From: Scyliorhinus canicula
Lineage: Eukaryota
Assembly (NCBI RefSeq): GCF_902713615.1
Contig: NW_024055500.1
Location: 248,001 to 312,000 of the forward strand
Direction of reading: 5' to 3'
DNA: 64,000 nucleotides
The notes beneath the pieces were generated by a model that was given only the letters and a program-made list of their open reading frames with translations, was not told where the DNA came from and did no database searches. Below, one piece after another: positions 14,908 to 49,403 of this stretch (the stretch's first letter is position 1; every line of letters begins with the position of its first letter). Both the position numbers and the translations under genes were made by a program.

Positions 14908-15186
14908 AATCCGATTATTCAGAACCATCCGTCTACGTCCTGCCTCCGAGGGGGAATCAGCCGAACGTTTCCCCCGTGTGCCTGGTGACGGATTATTTCC
15001 CCAACAACGTAAGCGTGTCCGTGAAGAATGGGGCCGCCAGCCAGGAACGAAACCATTCGTATGCCTCGCTCTCCATCGCAGATCGCAGCTACAGCATGGT
15101 GGGATTCCTGAACAGCCCTGCAAGCCAGCAGGATGAGAAATTTGAATGTACAGTTGGAGGGGAATGGAGGACATTGCCCGAAGCTG
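14908..15186 (+). CDS. TRAC: TCR alpha constant region exon 1 (Ig C domain)
   Basis: Acceptor ttttgccctccacAG at 14907 and donor GTGAGT at 15187; 279 nt, phase 1/1. Translation xSDYSEPSVYVLPP..VCLVTDYFPNNVSV..DRSYSMVGFL..FECTVGGEWRTLPEA has both Ig cysteines and the PSVY/CLxTD motifs of C-alpha. Confidence 0.95.
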
Positions 15187-15277
15187 GTGAGTTGCTCTGC
15201 TTTTTAATAATACTCGTACGGGAATTACAAATCATTTATTGGGATGGTGTCAATTATCCATGTCATTCTCATTTCAG

Positions 15278-15325
15278 CTCAAGTCAAGAGGCAGTGCATA
15301 GCTGTTGAGGAAGATAGTGATGGCG
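15278..15325 (+). CDS. TRAC: TRAC exon 2 (hinge/connecting peptide)
   Basis: Acceptor ttctcatttcAG, donor GTGAGT; 48 nt, phase 1/1; AQVKRQCIAVEEDSDG carries the interchain Cys. Confidence 0.92.
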
Positions 15326-16381
15326 GTGAGTATACCATGTGTTTGCGTACCTATGTGTATGTCTGCGTGTTTGTGCACGTTTTGTCTGTGTGCCTCTGTG
15401 TGTGTGAATACCTTTGTGCACACTCAAGTTCATAAATCATTGTGCGTGAGTAACAGTGTGTGTGTGTGTAAGTCTTTGTGGGTGTGTTTGTGTCGGCGAA
15501 TGTGAGGGACTTTGCACTGAAGTTGAAGAATGAAATGAACATCGCTTATTGTCACGAGTAGGCTTCAATGAAGTTACTGTGAAAAGCCCCTAGTCGCCAC
15601 ATTCCGGCGCCTGTCCGGGGAGGCTGGTACGGGAATCGAACCGTGCTGCTGGCCTGCTTGGTCTGCTTTAAAGTCAGAGATTTAGCCTGGTGAGCTAAAC
15701 CAGCAGAAGATGGGCAGCAGGGTAGCATGGTGGTTAGCATAAATGCTTCACAGCTCCAGGGTCCCAGGTTCGATTCCCGGCTGGGTCACTGTCTGTGTGG
15801 AGTCTGCACGCCTCCCCCTGTGTGCGTGGGTTTCCTCCGGGTGCTCCGGTTTCCTCCCATTGTCCAAAGATGTGCGGGTTAGGTGGATTGGCCATGCTAA
15901 ATTGCCCTTAGTGTCCTAATAAAAGTAAGTTTAAGGGGGGGGTTGTTGGGTTATGGGTATGAGAATGACAAATGGGTATGGGTATGGGGTGGATACGTGG
16001 GTTTGAGTCGGGTGATCATGGCTCGGCACAACATTGAGGGCCGAAGGGCCTGTTCTGTGCTGTACTGTTCTAAGATGCTGAAGTGTGTGTGTGTGTGTGT
16101 GTGTGTGTTTATGCATGTGTGTGCCTGTGAATGTGTTTTCGCATGTTTGTTTTTACGTGTGTGAGTGCGTGCATGCATGGTGGTGTGTCTGTGTGCCCAA
16201 GTATGTGTGTGTGTGTTGAGTTTGTGGACGCATGATGGTGTGTCTGTGTATTCAAGTGTCAAGTGTGTGGTGGCGTGTTTGTGGCCAAGTCTGTATGTGT
16301 GTGTGAGTGTGGGCATGGATGGTGGTGTGTTTACGTGTCCAAGTGTGTGTGTGTGAGTGTGAGCTTTTGCATGCATGGGTG

Positions 16382-16513
16382 NNNNNNNNNNNNNNNNNNN
16401 NNNNNNNNNNNNNNNNNNNNNNNNNNNNNNNNNNNNNNNNNNNNNNNNNNNNNNNNNNNNNNNNNNNNNNNNNNNNNNNNNNNNNNNNNNNNNNNNNNNN
16501 NNNNNNNNNNNNN
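16382..16513. other. Assembly gap (N run) in TRAC intron 2, next to a TG repeat
   Basis: Ns in the sequence. Confidence 1.
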
Positions 16514-16623
16514 GCAGTGCTCCCGTTCCCTCCCATTCTGTGTGCGCATCAATGTGGAGGAAGGGTTCCCTTTGTGACGAAGGCGGTTTGCTCATTCTCT
16601 GCAATTGCTTCTTCTTCCCGCAG

Positions 16624-16730
16624 TCGAACACTTGAACACCCTTTCCCTGACAGTCATCGGATTGCGAATTCTCTTCTTAAAAAGCATCGTCTTCAACGCC
16701 TTGATGACCTTTCGGATCTGGGTCTCATAA
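16624..16730 (+). CDS. TRAC: TRAC exon 3 (TM and cytoplasmic tail, stop TAA)
   Basis: Acceptor cttcttcttcccgcAG; VEHLNTLSLTVIGLRILFLKSIVFNALMTFRIWVS* has the conserved TM Arg and Lys and the alpha-type FNxLMTxRxW tail. Donor GTGAGT at 16733, 2 nt after the stop. Confidence 0.95.
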
Positions 16731-18238
16731 AGGTGAGTGACAACACTTTGCAAACTCGCCACCAAAGATTGGGAGCTCCCCTTCACACATCCTGCTTTGC
16801 CAAGTTGACCCATCAGTCCTTCAGGCGCACAGCAGTGTTGCCGAATCTTTTCTACGTTGTTCATTCATGGGGTGATAGAATCGCGACAGGGCCGAAGGAG
16901 GCCATTCAGCCTATCTAGTCGGCACCAACCCTCTGAAAGAACACCCTACTTAGGCCGCATCCCCAGCCTCTATCCCCTGCAACCCCCACCTTACCGTTGT
17001 ACACGAAGGGAGAATTTAGCATGGCCAATCCACCTAACCTGCACGTCTTTGGACTGTGGGAGGAAACCGGAGCACCCGGAGGAAACCCACGCAGACCCGG
17101 GGAGAGCGTGCAGACTCCGCACAGACAGTGACCCAAGCCAGGAATCGAACCTGGGACCCTGGTGCTGAAAGGCAGCAGTGCTAACCACTGTGCTGCCATG
17201 CCACCGATGTCGCCCATCCCTAATTGTCCTTGAACTAAATGACCACGTCAGTGGGGAGTCAATAAAGAGTCAACCACATCGCTGTGTGGATCTGGAGTCA
17301 CATGTAGGCCAGACAGGGTAAGGACGGCAGATTTCCTTCCCATAAGGGACCAAATGGCTTTTTGCCACAATCGATAATGGTTTTCTGGGCATCCTTTGAT
17401 TTTTAATTCCGCCATCTGCCAGTGTGGGATTCGAACCCCGGGCGCCCAGAGCAACCTCCTGGGTCTCCGGATTACTACTCCAGCCCGGAATGTCAATTGA
17501 ATCCGAAGTCTAGAATTGGACCCAGCCCCCATCTTTGCTGGAGAGAGTGTCGTGACTTTGTCGACCGTCAGCAAGTCCGAGCAGCTGCCCAGTGTCCCAG
17601 CTATCACCATTGACCGCTGTAAAAAGTCGCCTGTTCAACAATGCAATTGCTGTCGAACCGGAACAGAGGCAAATGCCAGGGGCGGCACGTGGGCGCAGTG
17701 GCTAGCGCTGGGACTAAGGCGCTGAGGACCCCGGTTCGAATCCCGGCCCTGGGTCACGGTCCGTGTGGAGTTTGCACATCCTCCCCGTGTCTGCGTGGGT
17801 TTCCCCCGCCCCCCCACAACCCAAAAGGATGTGCCGGTTCGGTGGATTGGCCGTGCTAAATTGCCCCTTAATTGGGGAAAAAAATATTTGGGTACTCTAA
17901 ATTTAAAAAGGAAAACAAAAACGAGGCAATTGTCGTTAACCCTCAACAGTGCCATTGCCGAGAATCCCTAACAAAGTAATTAATAAGGCATCGGCATAAT
18001 GGCGGATGGGAGGAAGTTAGTGTGGTACCAACATTGGCATGGACAACTGGAGGCCAAAGACCTGCTCCTCATAGTTTTACAGCACAAAACGAGGCCCTTC
18101 GGCCCATTGTCTCTGTGCTAGCCATCAAGCACATATCCATTCTAATCCCTATTTCTGTGCTCCAATTCGTTTTATTTGATACGATACGGCAATCATGCTC
18201 TGGACTAAAACCATCTCTTACATCTCTCTCCTCACCAG

Positions 18239-18860
18239 ATAGACCATCGAGCACAAGACCAGGACAGACCACAAGGCCGTGGCCAAGACCTGGAAGACCT
18301 TTGTTACCGCCTGGTGATGGCTCCAATGAAGGGCGACATGCCACATGTCAAAAACATATATGTGTTTGTATGTGTCAGTCACCATCCTCATGAATGTAGC
18401 ATTGCATAATGTTCATCCGTCCGATTCAAAGGACGGTGTCGCTTATTGAGCATAATCTCTTGCATGTACAGTTTCTGGTAAAACCCTCCTCATACTTATC
18501 TTTGTTGCTGTCTGAGCATATATTAAAAGTATCGGCTGTGTTATTGGAAGATGTACATTTAATCGTCTCTGTACATTCAGTAGTATAGTCATTTTTTTTT
18601 GTACAGTGCTTGAGTATCGCTACAACAGAACCTGCCAATCAATCTGTGCTCACTTCCCATGAAGTAGAAATTGTTGTTCTCTTCGCCATTTAGCACCTAC
18701 GCGCGAATCTGATGAGTGCCAGATTAAAAGCTTCGACAGCATTGTCTGGTTCTATCAGCAATACATTAAGGCTCACGGCCGAGCTCTTAGAATATTGACA
18801 TCCTGCAGTGCTGGAGTGCAGGGCATCGGGGGAATAAAAACAGGACCCATGAACGTACGA
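18239..18860 (+). other. TRAC: Probable non-coding 3'UTR exon of TRAC
   Basis: Pyrimidine tract plus AG (ctctctctcctcaccAG, 18238) in unique sequence and AATAAA at 18833-18838. The donor after the TRAC stop requires a further exon. Boundaries inferred. Confidence 0.5.
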
Positions 18861-21867: not shown

Positions 21868-22509
21868 GGGCACTTGAAACATCAGGGGCGGGAGTCTCCG
21901 GCGGCCGACGCCGGAATGGGGAAATGTGATTGGGCGGAGAATTGGCGTTGACGGCCAAATCGTGACGGTTTCACGCCGAATCACAATTCTCCACAGCGGC
22001 GTCAATGCGTTCCACTCCGCCCGTACAGTAAACAAGGTGAATCATTAGCGGCTGGAGCTTGTCAGCCTCCCGAGTGTCAATCACGGGCCTGGCGACTCCC
22101 GCATCGTCTCTCACTGGAATCGATTGTGTTCCATGCGGCGCCGGTGCTAGCCCCTCCGCAGACGCTGAGTCAGTCCAGGTGCGGCGCCATTTTTGCTGTC
22201 CTGAATCCTGCCCAGGCGCCAACGCTTAGTCCCAGGATCGAAGAATCCTGCCGCGCATTCCTGGATTATGGTACAAGTGAATGGGATTAGCGTGAGATGC
22301 GGGGCGGTTATTGTCAGGGTAGAGCCGATGGGCTGAAGGGTGTATTCTGTGCTCTATGGCTCTGTGAATCAATATGATGCAGTCACAGAGAGAGAGTGAG
22401 TGAAAGAGAGAGACAGCGGCCGGGATTCTCCGAGACACGGCGGGCAGGCCGTACCGTCGCCAAGGCGAGGCGTGAACCACTTCGGCATCGGGCCGTCCGG
22501 AAGGTGCAG

Positions 22510-23160
22510 AATCAAAGAACAAAGAAAAGTACAGCACAGGAACAGGCCCTTCGGCCCTCCAAGCCCGTGCCGCCCATGCTACCCGTCTAAACTAAAATCT
22601 TCTACGCTTCCGGGGTCCGTATCCCTCTATTCCCATCCTATCCATGTATTTGTCAAGATGCCCCTTAAACGTCACTATCGTCCCGGCTTCCACCACCTCC
22701 TCCGGCAGCGTGTTCCAGGCACCCACTACCCTCTGTGTAAAAATACTTGCGTCTCGCACCTTAAACCTATGCCCCCTAGTAATTAACCCCTCTACCCTGG
22801 GGAAAAGCCTCTGACTATCCACTCTATCCATGCCCCTCATAATTTTGTAGACCTCTATCAGGTTGCCCCTCAACCTCCGTCGTTCCAATGAAAACAAACT
22901 GAGTTTATTCAACCGCTCCTCATAGCTAATGCTCTCCACTCTAGGCAACATCCTGGTAAATCTCTTCTGCACCCTCTCTAAAGCCTCCACATCCTTCTGG
23001 TAGTGTGGCGACCAGAATTGAACACTCTACTCCCAAGTGTGGCCTAACTAAGGTTCTATACAGCTGCAACATGACTTGCCAATTCTTATACTCAATGCCC
23101 CGGCCAATGAAGGCAAGCATGCCGTATGCCTCCTTGACTACCTTCTCCACCTGTGTCGCC
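22510..23160 (-). mobile_element. CR1-type LINE fragment
   Basis: ALERVQKRFTRMLP..LRGNLIEVYKIMRG motif. Confidence 0.88.
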
Positions 23161-24115
23161 CCCTTTCAGTTGTCCTGCTTAAATTTTGTACCCCTCATTA
23201 GCCACCCAAACAAGAATTCACCCTTGCTCCGTGATGTTCAAATGCCAAGCCTATTGTTTTCTTGCAAAGCTAGCATTCTGCCATTAATTATGCGATTAGA
23301 ACATAGAACATAGAACATAGAACAGTACAGCACAGAACAGGCCCTTCGGCCCTCGATGTTGTGCCGACCCATGATCACCCTACTCAAACCCACGTATCCA
23401 CCCTATACCCGTAACCCAACAACCCCCCCCTTAACCTTACTTTTATTAGGACACTACGGGCAATTTAGCATCGCCAGTCCACCTAACCCGCACATCTTTG
23501 GACTGTGGGAGGAAACCGGAGCACCCGGAGGAAACCCACGCACACAGGGGGAGGACGTGCAGACTCCACACAGACAATGACCCAGCCGGGAATCGAACCT
23601 GGGACCCTGGAGCTGTGAAGCATTTATGCTAACCACCATGCTACCCTCCAACGTGAGCGGAGAGCCAAATGAATGAACTTACCCCCAAACTTAATGTTGA
23701 CAAGGGCGTCTGTGCGGAGTCTGCACGTCCTCCCCGTGTGTGCGTGGGTTTCCTCCGGGTGCTCCGGTTTCCTCCCACAGTCCAAAGATGTGCGGGTTAG
23801 GTGGATTGGCCATGCTAAATTGCCCGTAGTGTCCTAAAAAATAAGGTTAAGTTTGGGTTTGGGTTACGGGTATAGGGTGGATACGTGGGTTTGAGTAGGG
23901 TGATCATTGCTCGACACAACACCGAGGGCCGAAGGGCCTGTTCTGTGCTGTACTGTTCTATGTTCTATGTTCTATGATCACACGTTAGGTGAATTAGATA
24001 TTCTGAATTCTCCCTCTGTGTACCCGAACAGGCGCCAGAATGTGGCGACTGGGTGCCTCATGATCAAACCTTACTCGGTAGCATGAGGGTTCTTGTGAGG
24101 CAGATTGTTACTGTG

Positions 24116-24175
24116 TGAATGCTGGAGCTGATAATTTAATCTTTGGCGGAGGAACCAAACTCACTGTAACCCCAA
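24116..24175 (+). CDS. TRAJ: J-alpha segment NAGADNLIFGGGTKLTVTP (first J downstream of TRAC)
   Basis: RSS ggttcttgt-12-tactgtg; donor gtgagt. Confidence 0.93.
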
Positions 24176-24701
24176 GTGAGTACAGCATGTTTTACATTTA
24201 TCTGAAATGGTGTTGGAGATCTACACATTCAGATATTTCAGCTAAATTTGGAAATGCAGATCTCAATAGTTACAAACCTCACCAAGCAACATTAATGCAA
24301 TTGTTTAAAGATTGTAAACATCGAATAAGCAGCCAAAACTTCACTAAATTGGGTATAGAACTAAATTTGCATGTCATGTCACTGATTATTCTGGCCAATG
24401 TCGTGAAGTGGAATATGGGACAGAATTTCAGGTGAAGAACCACAGATCTCTTTTGAAATTCAATTGGAACAAGATTCATGAAATGTTATTGGTCACAGCT
24501 TGTGCATGCGTGAAGGTGCATGTGAGAAATTGTATCATTTCATCTCAGACCTGAACTTAGCAGAAAATTGCAATTGTTATGTCCCCAAAGTGTGCTACTG
24601 AAAAGTTTCCAAAACAAAAACTATCCTCATTTCAAAAGTGGTCTCACTGTCAGCTGCCCATTGTGAGCTCTGAGGTTTGTGCAAGGGAATGTGGCATTGT
24701 G

Positions 24702-24764
24702 TGACTTATGATAATACCGGAAAACTGACGTTTGCAACTGGGACTAAACTAACTGTGCAACCAA
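24702..24764 (+). CDS. TRAJ: J-alpha segment TYDNTGKLTFATGTKLTVQP (FATG variant)
   Basis: RSS ggtttgtgc-12-cattgtg; donor gtaagt. Confidence 0.88.
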
Positions 24765-25445
24765 GTAAGTGTTATAAATGGTCATCCATTGCTTTCAAAC
24801 AAAATAATATTTTCAGATCATTTAACGGTCGAGCTGGTCACATTGTATGTTGTCAATTAAAGGTCAGGTTGCATATTGCCAGTTAGAGATATTTTTGTGT
24901 CGTGGAAATAACGATTAGACAGAGGCTTCGAGCTTCGTTTCAGGACTTTATTAGCACGGTACCGTGGAGCGGCTGCAGTAGGCTGAATAGCCATTCCACA
25001 ACACTCTGAAATCACACAGCAGAAAGCATTATATAGTCTTATATACACAACTAAAGATGTAAACAGCAGCTGGCTGGCTTTGTTTATGTTAAACAAACAT
25101 TGGGATTGGAGCTGGTTCCTTATCTAGCACGTATTTCCTTGCCCTTGCTAAAACAACTGTTTCTAAGCAGTATTTTGTTTCCCTTATCTGACGTTCTAAA
25201 GTTTCGTTCAGAAGTACTGATAAAATATCGTCAAGCAATCCAATTACGCAAATTGTGTCTACCTTAGAAAACAGGGAGAATGAACTTTTCACGAACAATG
25301 TGATTGAGATGCCCAGACCAACGATGAAGACAACTGAACGTGCAACGTTTGTAATCTGCAAACTAACTTACTATTGTGAAGTGTGCCTCGTGGTAACACA
25401 TTTCTCGGTAGCAGGAGCGTTTTTGTGAGGGTAATTGTCACTGTG

Positions 25446-25508
25446 GGTATGATGGAACTGGTACTAAGCTGATCTTAGGCGGAGGGACTAAACTCATTGT
25501 AACCCCAA
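25446..25508 (+). CDS. TRAJ: J-alpha segment YDGTGTKLILGGGTKLIVTP (F to L variant)
   Basis: RSS cgtttttgt-12-cactgtg; donor gtgagt. Confidence 0.87.
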
Positions 25509-26068: not shown

Positions 26069-26128
26069 TGAATGCTGGAGCTGATAAATTAACCTTTGGC
26101 GGAGGAACCAAACTCACTGTAACCCCAA
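26069..26128 (+). CDS. TRAJ: J-alpha segment NAGADKLTFGGGTKLTVTP
   Basis: RSS ggttcttgt-12-tactgtg; donor gtgagt; duplicate of 24116. Confidence 0.93.
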
Positions 26129-27471: not shown

Positions 27472-27540
27472 GTGAGTACAGCATGTTTTCTTTTAACTGA
27501 AGCGATGTTGGGAGAGTTAGACATTAAGATACCCCAACGA

Positions 27541-38167: not shown

Positions 38168-38224
38168 TGAATAACCTCAACAAGCTGATATTTGGATCTG
38201 GCACCAAATTAACCGTGCAGCCTA
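38168..38224 (+). CDS. TRAJ: J-alpha segment NNLNKLIFGSGTKLTVQP
   Basis: RSS ggttaatgc-12-tactgtg; donor gtaagt. Confidence 0.9.
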
Positions 38225-39096
38225 GTAAGTGAAGTGAAATCCTGTATTATTGTTTTTACTTTATTTTTAAATTTAGAGTACCCAATTATTTTTGTCCAAT
38301 TCAGGGGTAATTTAGCGTGGCCAATCCACCTACCCTGCACATCTTTGGGTTGTGGGGGCGAAACCCACGCAAACACGGGGAGAATGTACAAACTCCACAC
38401 GGACAGTGACCCAGAGCCGGGATCGAACCTGGGACCTCGGCGCCGTGTGACAGCAATGCTAACCACTGTGCCGCCGTGCTGCCCTGAAATCCTGTATTAT
38501 TAATGAGCGAATGAATTATTAAGCCAAAGTGGTGGCACCTTTCTGAGGTTGCGCTAGTGGATAGCACTGTGGCTTCACAGCGCCAAGGTCCCTGGTTCGA
38601 TTCCCCGCTGGGTCACTGTCTGTGCACGTTCTCCCCGTGTCTGCGTGCGTTTCCTCCGGGTGCTCCGGTTTCCTCCCACAGTCCAAAGACGTGCAGGATG
38701 GGTGGATTGGCCAGGATAAATTGCCCTTTGTGACCAAAAATGTTAGGAGGGGTCGTTGGGTTACGGGGATAGGGTGGAAGTGAGGGCTTAAGTGGGTCGG
38801 TGCAGACTCAATGGGCCGAATGGCCTCCTTCTGCACTGTATGTTCTATAGTCTATGTTTCTGTTGCACTGCATCATTATAAAAGGAATGTCCTCCTTAGA
38901 TTCCAAGCATGTTGCGTGAATAATTATGTGTGTGTGTGTGACAATTAGCAACGGTCATTAAAACTACCTTGCACAGATGGTTGCATGATGATGGAATTCA
39001 GAGATGCATACTGGGTCCAATCTAATCGCCAGGCAGAGGGGGAACTGTATTAAAGTTAGCCTAAAGGGGGTTTATGCCATAGGACACAACACTGTG

Positions 39097-39159
39097 TGAA
39101 TACTGGCAGTGGCTTCAAGCTTATATTTGGACGAGGGACAAAGTTAATTGTGGAACCAA
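39097..39159 (+). CDS. TRAJ: J-alpha segment NTGSGFKLIFGRGTKLIVEP
   Basis: RSS ggtttatgc-12-cactgtg; donor gtaggt. Confidence 0.93.
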
Positions 39160-39739
39160 GTAGGTATTTGTTCACGTCTGCGGACTATCTATTTACAATA
39201 ATGTATGTTCTCGGGGCTGGTACAATGCATCAAATCATTTCTCTTTACGGCTAAATAATATGAATGCAACTTCTTACTGACGGTACATTTGATAACTCAT
39301 GTGATACATGAGGTCTTTCCGAAGAATTGTCTCCCAATATTCACCTACCAAGTTGAACATCGAGGTTCAACGATTATCTGGATTCGTTTTCACGAAAATG
39401 CCAGATGGTAGGCGATGGAAATCTGGATCAGAATGCAACAGAAACCTGATTGAGGAGGATTCCGGGTTCTAGAATTGGTGTAAGTCTCGAAAAGGCTACT
39501 TAGACAGTGACAGGGTAGCGCATGGATAGATTTGAACATTAAAGTTGAGTTTAGAAGAATTGCGACTGGTTTGTGGTCAACAAGATTGTGTTAGGCCAGT
39601 GCTGGATTCTGGATTATATAACTGAAAGCTATTTTTAACCATGTGAGAGAAGGATATGGTGACGGCGGAACATATTAATTAAACTGTATAAAGTATTAGT
39701 TGCAAAAGCAAAACTACATTTGTCCAAATATAAACACTT

Positions 39740-40340
39740 AATCTACCATGTGCGTGTGTATGAGATTGTGTGCGTCAGTGTATATGAGTGTGTGTGATTA
39801 TGGCAATTGCGTATGTGTGGATCTGCAAATTGTGTGTGTATGATTGTGAGTGAGTGTGTGAGTATAATTGTTTGTGTACCTGTGCATCTGTGTGTTTGCA
39901 GTGTGAATGTGTGTGTTTGAGAGAGAGAGGGGGAGGGGGAGAGAGAGAGTGTGTGCGTGTATGTGGCTGTGAGGGAGGATGTGTGTTGTGTGTGTGTGTG
40001 AGCATAAGTGAGTGCGTGTGAGGCAGAGGGTGTGTTTATGTCTGTGGGACTGTGAGTGTGTGGATGTCTGTTTGTGTGTGACTGTGTGCGTGATTGTGAG
40101 ACAGATTGTGATTGTGAAGTGTTTGTGTGGATGCCTGTTTGCGTGTGACTGTGTGCGTGATTGTGAGACAGATTGTGATTGTGAAGTGTGTGTGTGTGGA
40201 TGCCTGTTTGTGTGTGACTGAGTGCGAGATTGTGAGACAGATTGTGATTGTGGTGTGCGTGGATGTCTGTTTGTGTGTGACTTTGTGAATGTGAGCCTAA
40301 TTGTGATTGTGAACTGTGTGTGTGTGTGTGTGTGTGTGGG
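39740..40340. repeat. TG-rich simple repeat/minisatellite with a unit of about 62 bp
   Basis: Repeated gtgactgtgtgcgtgattgtgagacagattgtgattgtg units. Confidence 0.9.
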
Positions 40341-40578
40341 GCCATGCAATGACTGGAGTAGTAGTTTGTTCATGCTGAAGTTGGGGAGATAGATGCATAA
40401 AAATAATGGAATAAACACATAGTTAGGAACAATGGACAGACAGAAAGAAAGACAGGTTCCTCGGAAGAAATGCACGTGAACGTATCTCTGAGGTAAAATT
40501 CATTTACCTTGCATCAGTAAAGTAGACAAAGAACATTAGTTAACCCAAAGGGTTTTTGTGATGTAGTGTAGGGCTGTG

Positions 40579-40638
40579 TGAGAGATGGGAGCTACAAGTT
40601 AATTTTTGGAAGTGGGACTAGACTGATCGTGGAACCTA
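40579..40638 (+). CDS. TRAJ: J-alpha segment RDGSYKLIFGSGTRLIVEP
   Basis: RSS ggtttttgt-12-ggctgtg; donor gtaagt. Confidence 0.93.
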
Positions 40639-40836
40639 GTAAGTGGTATACTTTCAAATAGTAATGTCCCAATTCTGATCGCAAGAAATTAAAGGATTAT
40701 TGCGGGTAATCTGGGAAAGGAGAACAATTTAATTTCAAATAATTGAAATGGCAATGGGAACAAAGTAATATTTATCGCAGCGATACATTGAGAATCAGCA
40801 CTATTCTGAGTTCTTGTAAAAGGATACATTACTGTG

Positions 40837-40899
40837 TGAATACTGGAGGGCATGGCAAAATAGTCTTTGGCAGAGGGACAGAACTCATTGTTAATCCTG
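40837..40899 (+). CDS. TRAJ: J-alpha segment NTGGHGKIVFGRGTELIVNP
   Basis: RSS agttcttgt-12-tactgtg; donor gtaaga. Confidence 0.92.
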
Positions 40900-41223
40900 G
40901 TAAGAATTTAAGCTATTAGCAAGGACGTTGAAACTAAGCTGAACTTGAATGATGTTTTTTTTTGCTGAAAATGATGTATCAATGGTAGATTAATGTCACC
41001 AAAATTAAATTCTACTTTGACATGATGTATGAGGTGGCTCTCATATGTGAGACTGTCAGAATCTGCTTTGCCTACAAAAAGGTGGGGGTGATGCAAGATC
41101 ATGCACGCATTAATATTGTAAATGTGAAGATTGAATTTGTGTGCAACATAAAGTTGTTGTCGAAGGTTCGCCTCCAGGCCAAGTATCAGGTAAAGGGTTT
41201 ACGTACTGGCGTGTCATACTGTG

Positions 41224-41280
41224 TGGGCACACAGAATAAGCTAATATTTGGACAAGGGACTAAGCTGACAGTTGAACCTC
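41224..41280 (+). CDS. TRAJ: J-alpha segment GTQNKLIFGQGTKLTVEP
   Basis: RSS ggtttacgt-12-tactgtg; donor gtaagt. Confidence 0.91.
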
Positions 41281-41999
41281 GTAAGTGAAGCTTCATTCTG
41301 CATTTTTATGATGGCGTTGGTCGTCAAATTCTTAATAACGATTGCCAGTTCGTTAGAGTTAAATTGAAGAAATAATTTGCAGAAAAGAGTGAAGAGATAG
41401 ATGTGGAACTCATCTGATGGAAACCTTGAAGCAATGATGATGGGTTTTGATGGGGTAGATCTGGAGACTATTCATCCTCACTGAATGGAAGATAGTCATT
41501 AATAATTGCAATCAATTCACCGGAAACGTCTGGACCTAGAGATTGTTTGAATGTAGAACTCGCTGTAATGCGGAGCACTTGACGCAAACAATATATATCC
41601 CAAATGGAAAGCTAGATTAATAAATGACAGAGAGAAAGGAGTGGCTGGATATGTCGAAAGGCCGAGAGGAACTAGGGTGGGAGCAGATTTGGTCTCTGTA
41701 TTTGAAAATGAAATGAAAATCGCTTATTGTCACAAGTAGGCTTCAAATGGAGTTACTGTGAAAAGCCCCTAGTCGCCACATTCCGGCGCCTGTTCAAGAA
41801 GGCTGGTACGGGAATTGAACCGTGCTGCTGGCCTTGTTCTGCATCACAAACCAGCTGTCTGGCCCACTGACTAAATAATCCTGACATGTAGCTTGCACAA
41901 TTTTGCATTAATGGGATTTAGCGATGCCAGTTAATCAAATGCCAGTCAGTCAGGTCAATAACGTTCCAGGGGGTTTATGTCAAAGGCTTAAACACTGTG

Positions 42000-42062
42000 T
42001 GGACTTTGGGGGTGCTAACAAACTGATCTTTGGAAGCGGAACACAGTTAATTGTGGAGCCAA
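42000..42062 (+). CDS. TRAJ: J-alpha segment DFGGANKLIFGSGTQLIVEP
   Basis: RSS ggtttatgt-12-cactgtg; donor gtaggt. Confidence 0.93.
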
Positions 42063-42497
42063 GTAGGTATTCATTAATGACTATAGACTATCCGTTTATT
42101 TATGTGTGGCTTCTTCCGTCCTGCTTTTCAAGTAATTTAGCCATTTGTTCCATTCACCGTTGTCACTTCTGATTGAAGAATGGATTTGATCATTTAGTCA
42201 TTATGCGTGATGGGGTCTGATCGATATAGTCAACTACCTGTCATTATACATCTTGCCAAGTTATAATTATTATCCCAATTTCCTCAGTCGTCCTGGCTCC
42301 ACTGCGCTTTGGGTAAAAAGGCCCAGCGATGGATGCACTAAATCCCAATGAGAATTTGCATTTATTATATGTCTCTTTTAAAGAAATTGAAGGTCCTGAG
42401 GTGGCTCATTAAACACATGGCGAGTGAAATAATGACCGACCGTTGAATGTACTAAAGTTAGTCAGCAGGGGTTTTGGGTATAGGACTCAATGCTGTG

Positions 42498-42560
42498 TGA
42501 ATGGTGGAGGCAACAGAGAGGTTATCTTTGGAAGTGGCACAACGTTAACTGTGGGACCAA
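42498..42560 (+). CDS. TRAJ: J-alpha segment NGGGNREVIFGSGTTLTVGP
   Basis: RSS ggttttggg-12-tgctgtg; donor gtatgt. Confidence 0.9.
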
Positions 42561-43044
42561 GTATGTATTCATCAATAACTAATTTATTGGTAGACGTGTT
42601 GTGAGCATTACCTATAATGCCTTTGTGTTTGACCTATTCATGTAGCCTGTGATCGAAGACAAAAGTGACCCATGGTTTAGAGTCTCAAAGAAACAGAGGG
42701 TTGGAGAGGCAGGGTGATGGTGGTGGCGGGGTAGGGGGGGGGGGGGGGGGGGGGGTTGGGAGGGGGGGGGGGGTTGAGGAGATGGAGGGAGGGTCTTTTG
42801 GGAGAGAACGGCGCAGGCAAGGGCGAGATGACAGGAATCTGGAATGTGCGACAGAGTTGGATTGGAGGAAGTTAATAGCGGGCGTAAGGAATGGAGGAGG
42901 CGTGCTGCTGATGGAGGCTGTTGGGGCCAGAGATGGATTGGAGGAATGTGGATGAAGTGTGGAGGGTCTACGTCATACATTGCCACGAGAGACAAGGACG
43001 GTGAATCAGCACGGATGGTTTTTGTTGGACTGTGTAAGGCTGTG

Positions 43045-43104
43045 TGAGTTATGGAAACAGCCAACTTACTTTTGGAAGTGGAACCAGACTAATTGTGGAA
43101 CCCA
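43045..43104 (+). CDS. TRAJ: J-alpha segment SYGNSQLTFGSGTRLIVEP
   Basis: RSS ggtttttgt-12-ggctgtg; donor gtaagt. Confidence 0.93.
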
Positions 43105-45165
43105 GTAAGTGTTGCACTTTGCAAAGAACATTCGGATGAGCACAAATTGAAGTATTGTCATGGGTAATCCAAAAAGTCGAAAAATTAGCTGGTTGGGTCC
43201 ATTCCAAGTCACCAAAATGAGAATGAGAGTACTTCCAGTGGCAATTGATAAGCAGTTTCCTCAGATAATTTTGGAAGGAGTAACAGGAAGACAGAGTACT
43301 GGGCTAATGGGAATATTCTTGGTAGTGTGGATGAGCAGAGAGATCTCAGTGTCCATGTGCATAGATCCCTGAAGGTTGCCACCCATGTTGATAGGGTTGT
43401 GAAGAAGGTGTGTTAGCTTTTACTGGTAGAGGTATTGAGTTTCGGAGCCATGAGGTCATGTTGCAGCTGTACAAAACTCTGGTGCGGCCGCATTTGGAGT
43501 ATTGCGTGCAGTTCTGGTCGCCACATTACAGGAATGATGTGGAAGCATTGGAAAGGGAGCTGAAGGATCTCGGACTTGACTGTGTCAGTTGAGGGATTAT
43601 GAAACCATCAATTCAAGGTTACCAGCCGTTCTTGCGATTACTGAAACTCAGTAGAAATTCAAGTTAAAACTTGCCAGGTGCAAATAAGAATTGTTTTATT
43701 TGTCTTCTATTGATTACAACTTGAAAGTCATTTAAAAGACAGTTTGTAAACAATTTGAAGCTTTCAAAGGATCACAGGAATGATCTTCTTAGACAAACAG
43801 CTCGAAACATAACTTTTAAAAGTCAAAGTCTGAAAATGAAATATGAATACAGAGAGCCAGTGAATAGTTCAGATCAAAGTATAGATGCCTAAAACTCTCT
43901 CTCTCTCTCTCTTGACACTCTCTCTCTAGCCTAACTCTCCCTACCGTAACTCTCCCTACCCTAACTCTTCTCTCCCTAACCTAACTCTTCTCTCCCTAAC
44001 CTAACTCTTCCTAACTCTTCTAAAAATGGCGGCAAAATCCCCAATGGTTATACTATCTCATATCTGTCTTAAACGATCTGATCACACCCCACTATAATCC
44101 TAATTGGTTTGGGTTAGACTCAAACACATTTGATTTGATGGTAAGCTGTCCATCTTCAATATGCAACATTACTTCTAATTGTTGCCTGTCTGCCTTTTTT
44201 GTGCATGTTAAAGAATGCAATATTGTGCTTTATCAAAGCCAGCAAAAACTGGTCTAATGTTGACCTGACTACTGTAACTATGGAGACCTCATGCTATCTC
44301 GTCATGCCATGCTGGACATAACTCCAAAAATATAAATCAAACTGTCTATTTCAATCTAGTAAAGTAAATTATGTTGCTTTTATAAAATTGTTGTTTTGTG
44401 AATGTTGGAATCAAATATATATTTGATTCGATGTTCTAACTGTCCACTTATTAAAAACAAGGCAACGTAGTCTAAAATGTTTCAGCTTGTATAAGTCATG
44501 GGATGTAATTCACCCTAATCTCGAACAGTAGAAATTCACTCCTACCACCTCGTTGCCATGGATTCAGCCCTTGTCCTTGGAGAAATGAAATGAGAAGTGT
44601 CTGTCTTATCAGACTTCTGTGTTACTTTACAACTATGACAATGAAAATTGCAAAATATGTGTTTTCTTTCATTTTAATACCGGGGATTAATATTAACGCT
44701 TAAACGCTTAAAGCTATTTTTTTACCTATATTAGGTGTATTAGAAATACCTGGCTTCTACAGTTGCAGAGGAGATTTACCAGGATGTTGCCTGGTATGGA
44801 GGGAAGATCTTATGAGGGAAGGCTGAGGGATTGAGGCTGTTTTCATTAGAGAGAAGATTAAGAGATGACTTAATTGAGGCATACAAGATGATCAGAGGAT
44901 TAGATAGGGTGGACAGTGAGAGCCTTTTTCCACGGATGATGATGGCTAGCATGAGGGGACATAGCTTTAAATTGAGCGGAGATAGATATAGGACAGATGT
45001 TGGAAAAAGTGTCAATGGTGTCGAGCAGGGAGTACATGGGCCATGTGAAGGTATGGGCAGCCATGGGAGTTAGAAGCCTACTTGTTAATATTCAGCAAAT
45101 CAGCGAGGTAAAAGCTGTGTAACCTGTTGAGTGGGAGAGTTTTTGCAATGGCCTCAGGCATTGTG

Positions 45166-45228
45166 TGAATTCAGGAGGTGCAACTCCACTCATATTTGGG
45201 AGCGGCACCAAACTCACCGTAACACCCA
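45166..45228 (+). CDS. TRAJ: J-alpha segment NSGGATPLIFGSGTKLTVTP
   Basis: RSS agtttttgc-12-cattgtg; donor gtaagt. Confidence 0.93.
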
Positions 45229-45769
45229 GTAAGTAAGATATCATTTGGTGGATATCATCGTATCGGATGGTGATGTCTAGCACGAGGGGACATAGCTTCA
45301 AATTGAGGGGAGATAGATATAGGACAGATGTCAGAGGTAGGTTCTTTACTCAGAGAGTAGTAAGGGTGTGGAATGCCCTGCTTGCAACAGTGGTGGACTC
45401 GCCAACATTAAGGGCATTTAAATGGTTATTGGATAGACATATGGACGATAAGGGAATAGTGTAGATGGGCTTTAGAGTGGTTTCACAGGTCGGCGCAACA
45501 TCGAGGGCCGAAGGGCCTGTACTGCGCTGTAATGTTCTACGTGTTCTATAATTGTATATGTAAACAAAACGGCTACTTCAACTGTGTTAAGGAATCCTGT
45601 CCTGTTAATGATCTGCAGGATGATTTAAGCTATTTGGAGGGTAATAGAGAGACACTTGATTTGAATTGGCCAACATATTGTTCCACTAATTAAAAAACAG
45701 GCTGAAGATGTCAGAATAAATGTCACAAATCATAACTTTCCACAATGGCTGGCCTGTGTTTTTGTCAAG

Positions 45770-46520
45770 AACATAAGAACATAAGAACATAAGAACTAGG
45801 AGCAGGAGTAGGCCATCTGGCCCCTCGAGCCTGCTCCGCCATTCAATGAGATCATGGCTGATCTTTTGTGGACTCAGCTCCACTTTCCGGCCCGAACACC
45901 ATAACCCTTAATCCCTTTATTCTTCAAAAAACTATCTATCTTTACCTTAAAAACATGTAATGAAGGAGCCTCAACTGCTTCACTGGGCAAGGAATTCCAT
46001 AGATTCACAACCCTTTGGGTGAAGAAGTTCCTCCTAAACTCAGTCCTAAATCTACTTCCCCTTATTTTGAGGCTATGCCCCCTAGTTCTGCTGTCACCCA
46101 CCAGTGGAAACAACCTGCCCGCATCTATCCTATCTATTCCCTTCATAATTTTAAATGTTTCTATAAGATCCCCCCTCATCCTTCTAAATTCCAACGAGTA
46201 CAGTCCCAGTCTACTCAACCTCTCCTCATAATCCAACCCCTTCAGCTCTGGGATTAACCTAGTGAATCTCCTCTGCACACCCTCCAGCGCCAGTATGTCC
46301 TTTCTCAAGTAAGGAGACCAAAACTGAACACAATACTCCAGGTGTGGCCGCACTAACACCTTATACAATTGCAACATAACCTCCCTAGTCTTAAACTTCA
46401 TCCCTCTAGCAATGAAGGACAAAATTCCATTTGCCTTCTTAATCACCTGTTGCACTTGTAAACCAACCTTCTGTGACTCATGCACTAGCACACCCAAGTC
46501 TCTCTGAACAGCGGCATGCT
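45770..46520 (-). mobile_element. CR1-type LINE fragment
   Basis: RDLGVLVHES..LVRPHLEYCVQFWSP motif; (ACATAAGA)n tail. Confidence 0.9.
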
Positions 46521-46842
46521 TTAGGTGGATCCCCATTGTATGGATAAAACATTGGAATACAAGCTGATTCTCCTGGCGAGAGAGTTTAATACATCCTGCA
46601 GTGCTTGGAGCCATCTGATGAAGTGACACAGAGATTGTCACTTCACTGAAATAGAAATAATTTACCTCTTTTGGAAATTAAGTGAGGTGTGTCTATTTAT
46701 TATTGATGACCATTTCAAATCATACATACGGGTGGATTCACAGCGCTGGGATTCAGTGATATCTAGTACTAAAACAGAAGGGAGAAGCAAATGCCCTAAA
46801 GTTAGTCAGAAGGGGGTTTTTGCTAAAGGACTTACCTCTGTG

Positions 46843-46902
46843 TGAATGATGGTATCAGAAATCTTATCTTTGGAAGCGGAACAAAGTTAATTGTGGTGCC
46901 AA
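46843..46902 (+). CDS. TRAJ: J-alpha segment NDGIRNLIFGSGTKLIVVP
   Basis: RSS ggtttttgc-12-ctctgtg; donor gtaggt. Confidence 0.92.
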
Positions 46903-47800
46903 GTAGGTATTAATTAATAATTAAAAGACTGCATGTGTATTTACGTACATCTTCACGTTCTTATCAACAATTTCTGTGTTTGATTCATTCATAATGTTCT
47001 TGTTGGTAGCGGATAGGACAATTCTGGTCGTATGTGTGATGGTTCCCAACGTTGTAACTGCATGATTGTGCATTCTATCAAGCCAAAATGTGTACCTGAA
47101 ATTAACAGGGTTGCGTGGGTCAACGTCCCTTTGTTAAAAAGTCAAATAATCTGGCCCGATTATTTTTTTAAAAATCTCGATGCAACTTCCAGTTCGACGG
47201 CGCCTCTGGTGAAACAAAGTGCTACCAGACATGTCACTGGAGCATTGTTATACATTATTATACAACTGCTCGGCCCAGGACCACAAGAAACTTCAGAGAG
47301 ACGTGAACACAGTCCAGTCCATCACACAAACCCGCCTCCCATCCATGGACTCCATCTACACCTCCCGCTGCCTGGGGAAAGCGGGCAGCATAATCAAAGA
47401 CCCCTCCCACGCGGCTTACTCACTCTTCCAACTGTTTCCATCGGGCAGGAGATACAGAAGTCTGAGAACACGCACTAACAGACTCAAAAACAGCTTCTTC
47501 CCCCCACTGTCACCAACTCCTAAACTCTTATGGACTGACCTCATTAACACTGCACCCTGTATGCTTCATCCGACGTTGGTGTTTATGTAGTTACATTGTA
47601 GACCTTGTGTTGCCCTATTATGTATTTTCTTTTATTCCTTTTTCTTCCCATGTACTTAATGATCTGTTGAGCTGCTCGCAGAAAAATACTTTTCACTGCA
47701 CCTCGGTATACGGGACAATAAACAAAGCCAATCCATCGCTAAGATAGGCACAGAAGGATAATTAACTCAGTGGGTTTTTGTGAGGGGGTGCAGGGCTGTG

Positions 47801-47860
47801 TGAATGATGGGGGCTGGAAGCTTATCTTTGGAAGTGGCTCGAGAGTAATCGTGGAACCCA
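47801..47860 (+). CDS. TRAJ: J-alpha segment NDGGWKLIFGSGSRVIVEP
   Basis: RSS ggtttttgt-12-ggctgtg; donor gtaagt. Confidence 0.93.
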
Positions 47861-48051
47861 GTAAGTGGTGCATTTGGAAATGACAATGTCATAAATCTGA
47901 TTGGAAGCAAATAATGTCACCACTATAATCTGGAGAATATAATAAGTGGACCGCTTGGCTATTTCCAGTCCTTGAAGTGAGAGGGAGATATGAAAGGCAC
48001 ATTGGGGAAACAGCACTATTCAGAATCCTTGCAAAGGGATAGATTACTGTG

Positions 48052-48098
48052 TGGATGAATAGTGTTTGGAGGGCGTGTCAAGCTTATTGTTAACCTTG
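48052..48098 (+). pseudogene. TRAJ: Truncated J-alpha pseudogene (..IVFGGRVKLIVNL)
   Basis: aatccttgc-12-tactgtg; shortened 5' end; splice donor lost (GT to CT). Confidence 0.65.
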
Positions 48099-48359
48099 CT
48101 TAGAATTGATTCTGAGAACCAGGTAAATGATCCTGGAAAGTTGCAATGTATGAATTCTGCTCAGAGTAATACATTTGTGTGTTCTGTAAAAGGATATCAT
48201 AAATATATGAAGTTAATTGATCAAAAGGAGCCTGAAATGATGGGGGTTGCGGCACTTGTTAATATTTGAACCTCGCACCTTGCTAAATGTAACATTCCGT
48301 TGATTTTGCCGATGGTCTATATACCCAGCAGAGTTTCTGCATTGGTATTTAATGCTGTG

Positions 48360-48416
48360 TGAATAACTACAATAAGCTCACATTTGGCTCTGGGACCAGA
48401 CTAACTGTGCAGCCCA
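48360..48416 (+). CDS. TRAJ: J-alpha segment NNYNKLTFGSGTRLTVQP
   Basis: RSS agtttctgc-12-tgctgtg; donor gtaagt. Confidence 0.92.
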
Positions 48417-49123
48417 GTAAGTGAAGTTCCAGTCTGCATTTTTGTGATTATTATGCTGATGATAGTTAACCACTGTTTCAGGAATCAATGCGGCCTGTTC
48501 TTCACAATTTAAAGCTAACACGGGAAAATCTAAAAGGGCATTTAAATGGTCATTGGATAGATGATAAGGGAATAGTGTAGATGGGCTTTAGAGTGGTTTC
48601 ACAGGTCGGCGCAACATCGAGGGCCGAAGGGTCTGTACTGCGCTGTAATGTTCTATGTTCTAAACTCCCACCACCCTCTGGGGAAATGGTGTTTCCTCAC
48701 ATTCCCTTCGAAATCTCCTGCCCCGCACCTTAAATCTACGCCCCCTGGTGATTGACCCCTCCACCAAGGAGAAACGTTTTTTCCTGTCTACTCTATCTAT
48801 GTCCCTTCTAATTTAATACATCTCAATCATGTCCCCCCTCCTGCTCCCCTGCTCCAAGGAAACCCCATTCTATCCAATCTCTCTCCATAACTAAAACCCT
48901 CCAGCCCGGCCAACATCCTGGTAAATCTCCTCTGCACCCTTTCCAGTTCTATCACATCCCTCCTTATAATGTGGATTCCAGAACTGCGCACAATTCCTGG
49001 ACAGTAGGTTGAGACATATATCAATAATTTTGACTTATAACCGGGCTGATGTAGACATGTAACATTCAACTGATGTACTTGGCGTGAGGTGAAAGGGTTT
49101 CTGCACTGGTCTGTAATGCTGTG

Positions 49124-49180
49124 TGTATAACTATGGCAAGCTAGTATTTGGATCGGGGACTAAACTAACTGTGGAACCCA
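49124..49180 (+). CDS. TRAJ: J-alpha segment YNYGKLVFGSGTKLTVEP
   Basis: RSS ggtttctgc-12-tgctgtg; donor gtgagt. Confidence 0.92.
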
Positions 49181-49340
49181 GTGAGTGAAATTTCGTTCTG
49201 ATTTCTTTCCCCCCCCCATCTACGATGGGGATAGTGACAATATTACGGTTGGTGTTAAGAGTTAACTTTAGTTGCCGAAGGGGCAGAGAATCAGTATAGT
49301 TCATCTGAAGGGGGTTTTTGCTAAAGGGTACAATGCTGTG

Positions 49341-49403
49341 TGAATTTTGGAAGCGGTACAAAACTTACCTTTGGACAGGGGACAAAAGTAACTGTGGTAC
49401 CAA
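49341..49403 (+). CDS. TRAJ: J-alpha segment NFGSGTKLTFGQGTKVTVVP (last J in window)
   Basis: RSS ggtttttgc-12-tgctgtg; donor gtaggt. Confidence 0.92.

What the first reader, a model, noticed from the sequence alone, without database searches (positions are those of the whole stretch)
14908..49403. Intact C-alpha sits inside the J-alpha cluster: 36 J segments lie downstream of TRAC with no second C in view
Seen: 12 J or J relics come first, then a complete 3-exon TRAC, then 36 more same-orientation J segments with 12-RSS and GT donors, most of them intact. No C exon is visible over the next about 14.6 kb. Established: in characterised TRA/TRD loci the J-alpha array lies 5' of a terminal C-alpha, and the C inside the locus is C-delta. 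This C is alpha-type (CLVTDY, short hinge, FNALMTFRIWVS tail). Deletional V-to-J joining into array 2 would delete this TRAC. Inference, three options: (a) a duplicated J-C-alpha cassette with a second, possibly divergent C-alpha further 3' or in the gap at 50448, allowing sequential replacement of the whole J-C unit; (b) intact J segments spliced to a distant or different C; (c) a misjoin in the repeat-dense 18.8-24 kb interval. The 499-N gap is too short for a C-alpha of at least 1.8 kb if its size estimate is right. Intact RSSs and recent duplication argue that array 2 is in use.
Basis: partly seen in the sequence, partly recalled or inferred. Interest (0 to 1): 0.85.

Follow-up and report, generated by a model that had tools for sequence, protein, structure and literature searches.

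The report
Duplicated J-alpha block behind shark TRAC
The 31 T-cell-receptor J segments that lie after the alpha constant gene in this shark assembly are a 2%-diverged copy of part of the normal J array upstream, joined head-to-tail behind the gene; this most likely marks a tandemly duplicated J-C cassette whose second half was never assembled, so it is not yet proof of a new locus design.

Summary
The J–C–J layout exists in the assembly. About 11 J or J relics are followed by a four-exon TRAC and then by 31 same-strand J segments, not 36. The C is alpha-type, and TRDC lies about 80 kb upstream in the canonical order.

Three facts were not visible from the window alone:
- "Array 2" (window 23164–50447) is a collinear copy, 2.05% diverged, of C108:203842–225405, which is an internal part of the main J array.
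- It sits in a 33.9-kb contig bounded by two gaps. That contig stops inside a low-complexity tract about 200 bp before the position of the next J in the upstream copy.
- Its left edge is a direct-orientation join of TRAC's 3' flank to an upstream point, at the 5' end of a truncated LINE. This is the signature of a tandem duplication of about 67 kb, covering the J array plus TRAC.

The assembly holds only one TRAC. No C exon lies within 114 kb downstream.

My odds are:
- About 0.4 for a duplicated J–C cassette with an unassembled second C.
- About 0.25 for an orphan J block.
- About 0.3 for misassembly (chimeric contig 0.25, retained haplotype 0.05).

Read-level tests failed or were blank. Earlier notes of this scan covered J-duplicate codon patterns on this stretch, not this layout.

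The parts
324..11409 (+). Array 1 within the window: 9 intact TRAJ segments. It is the 3' end of a longer J-alpha array that starts near C108:200078.
   Evidence: J segments at 324-408, 1705-1792, 2460-2550, 3903-3990, 4153-4243, 5909-5993, 7616-7706, 9736-9823 and 11319-11409. Each has a nonamer, 12-nt spacer, heptamer, FGXG and GT donor. 56 more J-alpha lie upstream of the window.
7360..12470 (+). Two J relics, near 7413-7446 and 12398-12470.
   Evidence: The first has FGRG and a donor but a poor RSS. The second has a stop in FR4 and no donor.
14908..15186 (+). TRAC exon 1 (Ig C1-set domain, CLVTDYF).
   Evidence: Acceptor cag|AA and donor G|gtgagt. Pfam C1-set E=2.9e-9. 84% identical to the S. 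torazame protein and 56% to Mustelus TCR alpha-like proteins. Single copy in the genome.
15278..15325 (+). TRAC exon 2 (hinge with the interchain Cys).
   Evidence: Bounded by cag| and |gtgagt, with phase 1 at both ends. It corresponds to the hinge of Mustelus P0003.
16382..16513 (.). 132-N assembly gap inside TRAC intron 2; also a contig boundary.
   Evidence: The left flank is GT-rich low complexity, and the two contig ends do not overlap.
16624..16733 (+). TRAC exon 3 (transmembrane region and short tail; stop at 16728-16730, then a donor).
   Evidence: 76% identical to the Mustelus TM region. Genome-wide only this exon and the TRDC TM exon match.
18239..18855 (+). TRAC exon 4 (3' UTR).
   Evidence: Acceptor ccag|ATAGACC, and AATAAA at 18833. 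The tail of the S. torazame model P0001 reads into the matching sequence.
22508..23163 (-). 5'-truncated CR1-like LINE fragment. Its natural 3' tail is at about 22508 and its cut 5' end is at the junction.
   Evidence: 92.9% and 91.6% identical to copies at window 138074-138730 and 162800-163477, both of which continue past the cut point. It has an (AGAACAA)n tail.
23163..23164 (.). Junction between TRAC's 3' flank and the start of block B (equivalent to C108:203842).
   Evidence: Alignment of B, A and LINE copies shows one exact shared base plus imperfect flanking similarity. No listed public run held the 3 sampled words across the junction.
23164..50447 (+). Block B: a collinear paralogous copy of C108:203842-225405 (block A of the upstream J array).
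   Evidence: 94-98.4% identical per blast block. 2.05% substitutions, ts/tv 1.36, 23% in CpG context and few 1-bp indels. A test piece has exactly two copies in the genome.
23298..23648 (-). SINE present in B and absent from A.
   Evidence: The A/B homology resumes on both sides of it.
24088..49403 (+). 31 TRAJ segments of block B.
   Evidence: Nonamer starts are 24088, 25418, 26041, 27381, 28172, 29038, 30980, 31845, 32230, 33274, 33729, 34113, 35147, 35601, 35984, 37029, 37483, 38140, 39069, 40551, 40809, 41196, 41972, 42470, 43017, 45138, 46815, 47773, 48332, 49096 and 49313.
25418..25508 (+). The only B-block J that has lost the canonical Phe (LGGG; TTC to TTA relative to A).
31783..37570 (+). 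Three tandem units of about 1.88 kb plus a partial fourth, each with 3 J; block A has about one unit here.
   Evidence: The units differ from each other by 3.1-4.2%, more than A differs from B overall. Their RSSs are almost invariant.
49990..50447 (+). GA-rich low-complexity tract at the contig end, still homologous to A.
   Evidence: In A the tract runs to about 225590 and the next J starts at 225651.
50448..50947 (.). 500-N gap, one of three gaps of exactly this length in this stretch; probably a placeholder.
   Evidence: further 500-N gaps at window 99465 and 124383.

Best explanation
Shown: array 2 is not an independent J array. It is the first 27 kb of a second copy of a segment that starts inside the main J-alpha array (C108:203842).

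Inferred: that segment ran through the remaining J-alpha segments, TRAC and about 4.3 kb of its 3' flank, about 67 kb in all. It was duplicated head-to-tail in the germline. The join lies at the 5' end of a truncated LINE. Either the LINE cDNA bridged two sister chromatids, or the break fell inside an older LINE. The product is J-array–C-alpha–J-array–C-alpha.

The assembler resolved only the part of copy 2 that differs structurally from copy 1. It broke in a low-complexity tract just before a 1.85-kb tandem J-unit array. The rest of copy 2, including the second TRAC, is collapsed, purged or missing behind a placeholder gap.

If so, V-to-J joining into cassette 2 deletes cassette 1 and uses the second C.
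For: - Homology: B is collinear with A from window 23164 (C108:203842) to the contig end.
- Junction geometry: a distal point (C108:271163) is joined to a proximal point (203842) in direct orientation, which is the geometry of a tandem duplication. A minus-strand LINE has its natural 3' tail on the distal side and its cut 5' end on the proximal side. This matches the published LINE-bridged tandem-duplication architecture (PMC7058536).
- Boundary: the 314 bp just upstream of A are single-copy in the assembly, so B has no other left flank on record.
- Right end: B stops at a gap inside a tract that in A is followed after about 200 bp by the next J.
- Real paralogy: 2.05% substitutions with ts/tv 1.36 and CpG enrichment, a private SINE, and a difference in unit copy number.
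- Preservation of the B-block J segments: 30 of 31 are canonical. My rough estimate is 4-6 disabling changes under neutral drift, giving P(one or fewer) of about 0.02-0.09. No change hits a heptamer GTG. A/B codon changes are 0 synonymous to 9 nonsynonymous before FGXG, against 4 to 4 in FR4 (Fisher p=0.03).
- Scaffold join: TRAC exons 1-2 end one contig and exons 3-4 begin the next in the same orientation, so the join across the 132-N gap is gene-consistent.
Against: - The assembly holds no second TRAC exon 1, TM exon, TRAC 3' flank or array-1 piece. A copy diverged by 2% might have been expected to assemble separately.
- None of the listed public runs held the 3 sampled 31-mers across the junction, although 20 runs held TRAC exon 1. 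This is a weak search, but it points the other way, or to a polymorphic duplication.
- The LINE is at most 93% identical to the best relatives found. It therefore looks older than the duplication, which argues against the LINE-bridging variant but not against a break inside an older LINE.
- The selection statistics rest on small counts. They could also reflect gene conversion from A.
- No read-level or RNA evidence could be obtained.
Confidence: 0.4

Rival explanations
1. Orphan J block. The junction is real, but only a partial J block lies 3' of the single TRAC. Either it was a dispersed partial duplication, or copy 2 later lost its distal part and its C. These J segments can rearrange but cannot be spliced to a C, so they are slowly decaying passengers.
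For: There is only one TRAC in the genome, and no C exon within 114 kb after B. One B-block J has lost the FGXG Phe while its A-block partner has not. RSS plus FR4 divergence (1.2%) is about half the flank value (2.05%), which is what one constrained copy and one free copy would give.
Against: It needs a second junction or a later deletion that nobody has seen. B is still homologous to A where the contig ends, so its true end is unknown. 30 of 31 J are intact, against my rough estimate of 4-6 disabled under neutrality. All 9 changes before FGXG are nonsynonymous.
Confidence: 0.25
2. Misassembly. The 33.9-kb contig is chimeric at 23163/23164. Block B really lies inside the J array upstream of TRAC, for example as a tandem paralog that the long upstream contig skipped.
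For: The contig is short and bounded by gaps on both sides, and the next contigs are also short and joined by 500-N gaps. The TRA/TRD locus is split over several pieces, and DAD1 is on another scaffold. No listed run holds the junction words. The join coincides with a repeat end.
Against: A random chimera would not join two points 67 kb apart in the same locus in direct orientation. The LINE is only 656 bp long and at most 93% identical to other copies found; by my general knowledge of long-read assemblers that is too little for a false overlap. The upstream contig is gap-free for more than 106 kb with no room for B. A's upstream flank has no second copy.
Confidence: 0.25
3. Retained alternative haplotype. 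B is the allelic version of A that was left in the primary assembly (a false duplication).
For: It is a duplicate next to gaps in an immune locus, and the junction words are absent from the listed runs.
Against: 2.05% substitutions, a private SINE and a three-fold difference in unit copy number; by my general expectation for allelic variation that is too much. The contig's left 6.6 kb is the TRAC TM exon, UTR and flank, not A's upstream sequence. The copy lies 68 kb from A, not beside it.
Confidence: 0.05
4. The B-block J segments are spliced to a distant or different constant gene.
For: The donors and RSSs are intact.
Against: A sensitive tblastn with shark TRAC, TRDC and TM queries finds no C-type exon in 114 kb after B. 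Genome-wide, only TRAC and TRDC carry this TM type.
Confidence: 0.03

Closest known systems
Canonical vertebrate TRA/TRD locus, 5'-TRDC-(TRAJ)n-TRAC-3' (as used in PMC10322711)
   Same: On C108 the order is TRDJ (160-174 kb), TRDC (182.8-185.4 kb), about 65 intact TRAJ (200-259 kb) and TRAC (262.9-266.9 kb), all on one strand, with the published exon-1 peptide signatures.
   Different: 31 further TRAJ follow TRAC, starting 4.3 kb after its 3' UTR. They are a copy of an inner part of the same array.
Tandem J-C or D-J-C cassettes of other antigen-receptor loci (mammalian TRB, IGL) - my general knowledge
   Same: Under the favoured reading the locus would hold two J-C units in series. Joining into the distal unit would delete the proximal one.
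   Different: Each unit would carry tens of J segments rather than one to seven. The second C has not been seen. No characterised TRA locus I know of has this layout (single C-alpha in Ballan wrasse, PMC5972329).
LINE-bridged direct tandem duplication (PMC7058536, Fig. 7)
   Same: A short 5'-truncated LINE sits exactly at the head-to-tail join. Its 3' end is at the integration site and its 5' end is attached to a point that lies downstream in the LINE's own orientation.
   Different: This would be a germline event with a CR1-like element, not somatic human L1. The element looks older than the duplication. Only one copy of the duplicated segment is fully assembled.
False duplications and collapsed segmental duplications in long-read assemblies - my general knowledge
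   Same: The block sits in a short contig between gaps, within a tandem-repeat-rich immune locus that is fragmented in this assembly.
   Different: The two copies differ by real substitutions, a SINE and a copy-number change. The contig begins with unique TRAC sequence.

Membership tests
TCR alpha constant gene (TRAC) | Exon 1 is an Ig C1-set domain with the CLxTD(x)F signature | tested here: met
   CLVTDYF; Pfam C1-set E=2.9e-9, while DUF1968 (the TCR-alpha C family) scores below its cut-off; signature definition from PMC10322711.
TCR alpha constant gene (TRAC) | Hinge exon with Cys, TM exon with the conserved Arg and Lys, and a short tail | tested here: met
   Exon 2 holds QC. Exon 3 reads GLRILFLK and ends RIWVS, then stop. 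It is 76% identical to the Mustelus TM region.
TCR alpha constant gene (TRAC) | Lies 3' of a J-alpha array that itself lies 3' of TRDC | tested here: met
   TRDC exon 1 is at C108:182829 and its TM exon at 185352. About 65 intact J-alpha lie between it and TRAC.
TCR alpha constant gene (TRAC) | Spliced to rearranged V-J in thymocyte RNA | not testable with these tools
No protein from this species was in the protein collection searched.
Functional TRAJ segments (block B) | 12-RSS, open frame with FGXG, and a GT donor in phase 1 | tested here: met
   30 of 31 meet all three; one reads LGGG.
Functional TRAJ segments (block B) | A constant gene downstream on the same strand | tested here: not met
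   None in 114 kb, and none elsewhere in the assembly. The assembly is broken at 50448.
Tandem segmental duplication of the J-C cassette | A single junction joins a distal point to a proximal point in direct orientation | tested here: met
   C108:271163 is joined to 203842.
Tandem segmental duplication of the J-C cassette | The second copy extends through the rest of the segment, including a second TRAC | tested here: inconclusive
   The homology continues to the contig end, but no second copy of the remainder is in the assembly.
Tandem segmental duplication of the J-C cassette | The junction is present in independent reads or animals, and a collapsed part shows double read depth | tested here: inconclusive
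   No run was listed for the junction words (3 words only). Read depth could not be measured.
Assembly false duplication (retained haplotype) | The copies differ only at the allelic level and lie side by side across a gap | tested here: not met
   2.05% substitutions, a private SINE and a unit copy-number change; the copies are 68 kb apart.

The most novel reading that the evidence does not exclude
This shark carries two complete J-alpha–C-alpha cassettes in tandem, about 65 J segments plus C followed by 31 or more J segments plus a second C, both in use. A thymocyte that has exhausted cassette 1 could then delete it entirely and continue receptor editing in cassette 2. This architecture is known for TRB and IGL but not for any characterised TRA locus.
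Probability: 0.35. Interest if true: 0.7.

Novelty: new variant of a known kind. Interest (0 to 1): 0.5.

Why it matters
The TRA locus is the textbook case of one long J array in front of one terminal C. That design is what allows repeated V-J replacement (receptor editing) on a single allele.

A germline duplication of the whole J–C unit in a cartilaginous fish would show that this design can be multiplied. It would add a further round of editing and about 30 or more extra J segments with altered CDR3 codons.

There is also a practical lesson. J counts, "extra" gene segments and missing C genes read from this assembly are unreliable around C108:264-300 kb. Anyone annotating shark TCR loci from it should treat the block as unresolved.

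Tried and rejected
I therefore have no read depth, no junction reads and no J-to-C splice evidence.
- The junction search in public runs (60 nt, 3 sampled words) listed none.
- The search for homologous proteins with exon 1 alone found nothing. With a longer frame it found only S. torazame and Mustelus proteins, and none from this species.
- The look-up of encoding contigs gave no DNA for the S. torazame contig and no record for P0002, P0003 or two window ORFs, including a positive control. TRAC neighbourhoods in other sharks could therefore not be compared.
- Whole-genome DNA searches with long queries were swamped by repeats. Short unique pieces worked.
- A search for the missing remainder of the junction LINE at the starts of the downstream contigs found only intact LINE copies.
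- No homology was found between TRAC's 3' flank and the post-gap contig.
- A germline RAG excision and reinsertion was considered and rejected, because neither breakpoint sits at an RSS.
- My first TM-exon queries were one base out of frame. I repeated the genome search in frame; the Pfam scan of that exon was not repeated.
90 kb was obtained in pieces.

Full report
**Context.** The window is G000:C108:248001-312000, on a 5.22-Mb scaffold of a 4.22-Gb, 646-sequence genome. The closest protein to its C exon is from the cloudy catshark Scyliorhinus torazame (84%), followed by Mustelus asterias "T cell receptor alpha chain-like" models (56%). It is therefore a shark. The window has two gaps: 16382-16513 (132 N) and 50448-50947 (500 N).

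**The observation.**
- A scan for nonamer, 12-nt spacer, heptamer, FGXG and a phase-1 GT donor finds segments only on the + strand. There are 9 intact J and 2 relics at 324-12470, and 31 J at 24088-49403.
- Thirty of the 31 are canonical. One, at 25418-25508, reads LGGG.
- TRAC lies between the two groups. Exon 1 is 14908-15186, the hinge exon is 15278-15325, and the TM exon is 16624-16733 with its stop at 16728 followed by a donor. A 3'UTR exon starts at 18239, with AATAAA at 18833.
- The exon joins reproduce the domain order of the Mustelus proteins. The S. torazame model runs from the TM exon into the same 3'UTR sequence.

**The gap flagged by the scan's program.** The 132-N gap lies in intron 2 and touches no coding base. 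Exon 2 ends in phase 1, and exon 3 supplies the two missing bases (G|TC). The gap is also the boundary between two contigs, and the contig ends do not overlap. The only evidence that the two sides are continuous is that together they make one correct, single-copy gene.

**Identity of the C.**
- Exon 1 is a C1-set domain (Pfam E=2.9e-9).
- It carries CLVTDYF, which is the TRAC signature "CLXTD followed by F or XF" of PMC10322711.
- About 80 kb upstream, at C108:182829, lies an exon with CLASDFYP, the TRDC signature CLXXXFXP. Its TM exon is at 185352-185444. Three TRDJ-like segments lie before it.

**What array 2 is.**
- The 90 kb upstream of the window holds 59 more J segments and no gap.
- The J segments at C108:204426-224410 are the same series, in the same order, as array 2.
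- Blast shows window 23649-50432 to be collinear with C108:203984-225405 at 94-98.4% identity.
- Window 23298-23648 is a minus-strand SINE present only in the distal copy. Beyond it the homology resumes, so it really starts at window 23164, equivalent to C108:203842. I call the upstream copy A and the distal copy B.
- A test piece of the block has exactly two copies in the genome.
- The copies differ by 2.05% substitutions over 19.7 kb. The ts/tv ratio is 1.36, 23% of changes are in CpG context, and there are only 16 one-base indels.
- B has three and a bit 1.88-kb units of three J segments each where A has about one.
- These are evolutionary differences, not consensus errors, and by my general expectation they are too many for alleles.

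**The two ends of B.**
- *Right end.* The contig stops at 50447 inside a GA-rich tract. In A that tract continues for about 150 bp and is followed by the next J at 225651. That J opens an array of eight to nine 1.85-kb J units that are 95-96% alike. The duplication therefore runs on past what was assembled.
- *The gap behind it.* Two more gaps of exactly 500 N follow, between contigs of 48 and 24 kb. From that I infer these gaps are placeholders of unknown true size.
- *Left end.* B abuts the 5' end of a minus-strand CR1-like LINE fragment (22508-23163). The LINE's natural (AGAACAA)n 3' tail faces TRAC. Two related copies further downstream in the fetched region continue past the cut point.
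- *The join.* It shares one exact base, with imperfect similarity around it.
- *A's upstream flank.* The 314 bp immediately upstream of A's start are single-copy in the assembly. No other left flank of B is on record.

**Interpretation.**
- A join of a distal point (C108:271163) to a proximal point (203842) in direct orientation is what a head-to-tail duplication of the intervening 67 kb leaves behind. That segment contains block A, the remaining roughly 45 J segments, TRAC and its flank.
- A short 5'-truncated LINE at exactly such a join, with this polarity, is the published architecture of LINE-bridged tandem duplications (PMC7058536).
- However, this LINE is at most 93% identical to its best relatives found. 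A break inside an older element is therefore at least as likely as bridging.
- Either way, the event would have created J-array–C–J-array–C.
- The assembly contains only the head of copy 2. That head is the portion with structural differences from copy 1, and the contig ends where a highly repetitive tandem array begins.

**Are the B-block J segments maintained?**
- Between A and B, the RSSs differ by 1.3% and FR4 by 1.2%, against 2.05% overall.
- Five of the eight RSS changes are in spacers. None hits a heptamer GTG. The only nonamer change is in A, away from the consensus.
- By my rough count of critical sites, neutral drift would have disabled about 4-6 of the B-block J segments. One (F to L) is observed, giving a Poisson P of about 0.02-0.09.
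- Codon changes before FGXG are 0 synonymous to 9 nonsynonymous, against 4 to 4 in FR4 (Fisher p=0.03).
- This agrees with earlier first-stage notes on the same stretch (s1-246772, s1-246664).
- The evidence is modest. It favours use of B, but it would also fit gene conversion from A, or one constrained copy and one free copy.

**What speaks against the favoured reading.**
- The assembly has one TRAC exon 1, one TRAC TM exon, one TRAC 3' flank and one copy of each array-1 piece tested.
- No TCR C or TM exon, V-type RSS or J lies in the 114 kb after B.
- Twenty public runs hold TRAC exon 1, yet none was listed for a 60-nt query across the junction. That query sampled only three words, so it is weak. 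It still raises the odds of a chimeric contig or of a duplication private to the reference animal.
I therefore have no depth, junction-read or splice evidence.
- DAD1, the usual 3' neighbour of TRAC, is on another scaffold. The V arrays are on other pieces. The locus is clearly fragmented in this assembly.

**Weighing the readings.**
- *Random chimera:* it would not link two points of the same locus in direct orientation. By my general knowledge of long-read assemblers, a 656-bp LINE at most 93% identical to other copies is a poor substrate for a false overlap. I therefore put a real junction near 0.7.
- *Given a real junction:* a single-junction tandem duplication is the simplest origin. Whether copy 2 still carries its C is unknown.
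- *My odds:*
  - 0.40 for a duplicated cassette with an unassembled second C.
  - 0.25 for an orphan J block.
  - 0.25 for a chimeric contig.
  - 0.05 for a retained haplotype.
  - 0.03 for a different C.

**Verdict.** "36 J segments downstream of TRAC with no second C" should read [quoted passage not shown]. It is a good lead for a new TRA locus variant but not a demonstrated one. Interest 0.5.

Noticed in passing
L024-L022 (C108:225600-240400, i.e. window -22400 to -7600): There are eight to nine tandem units of about 1.85 kb, each with three J segments, 94-96% identical to one another and found only on C108. This stretch is likely to be under-counted in any assembly.
   Followed up: partly
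L030-L028 (C108:160370-185444): Three TRDJ-like segments (one with a stop), TRDC exon 1 (CLASDFYP) at 182829 and the TRDC TM exon at 185352-185444 complete the canonical delta part of the locus.
   Followed up: partly
window 41196-41280 versus C108:216740-216824: The FGXG motif differs by two adjacent bases (CAA against CCC, i.e. FGQG against FGPG). This is an example of the adjacent double substitutions noted by earlier readers.
   Followed up: no
G000:C10:106640819-106643386 and C9:77106576-77106881: DAD1, normally next to TRAC, is on a chromosome-scale piece (two exon hits). An intron-less copy with an open frame, possibly processed, is on C9. Neither is on C108.
   Followed up: no
window 67000-79000 and 142000-151200 (loci L012-L020): Large minisatellite arrays give very long open frames (up to 1509 codons) made purely of repeats.
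   Followed up: no
L020:7151-7462 (-) (window about 151150-151462): A short open frame looks to me like the last exon of an SLC7-type amino-acid transporter, which would fit the usual gene neighbourhood 3' of TRAC. Pfam did not support it.
   Followed up: partly
protein P0001 (S. torazame): This public model fuses two J-like exons, reads through the hinge donor and translates the TM exon out of frame. It is useful for splice positions only.
   Followed up: partly
C108:203100-203527 (L026): A 428-bp older copy of the J region found at C108:220865 in A and at window 45111 in B (95.3% and 94.6% identical) sits just upstream of block A, separate from the A/B duplication.
   Followed up: partly
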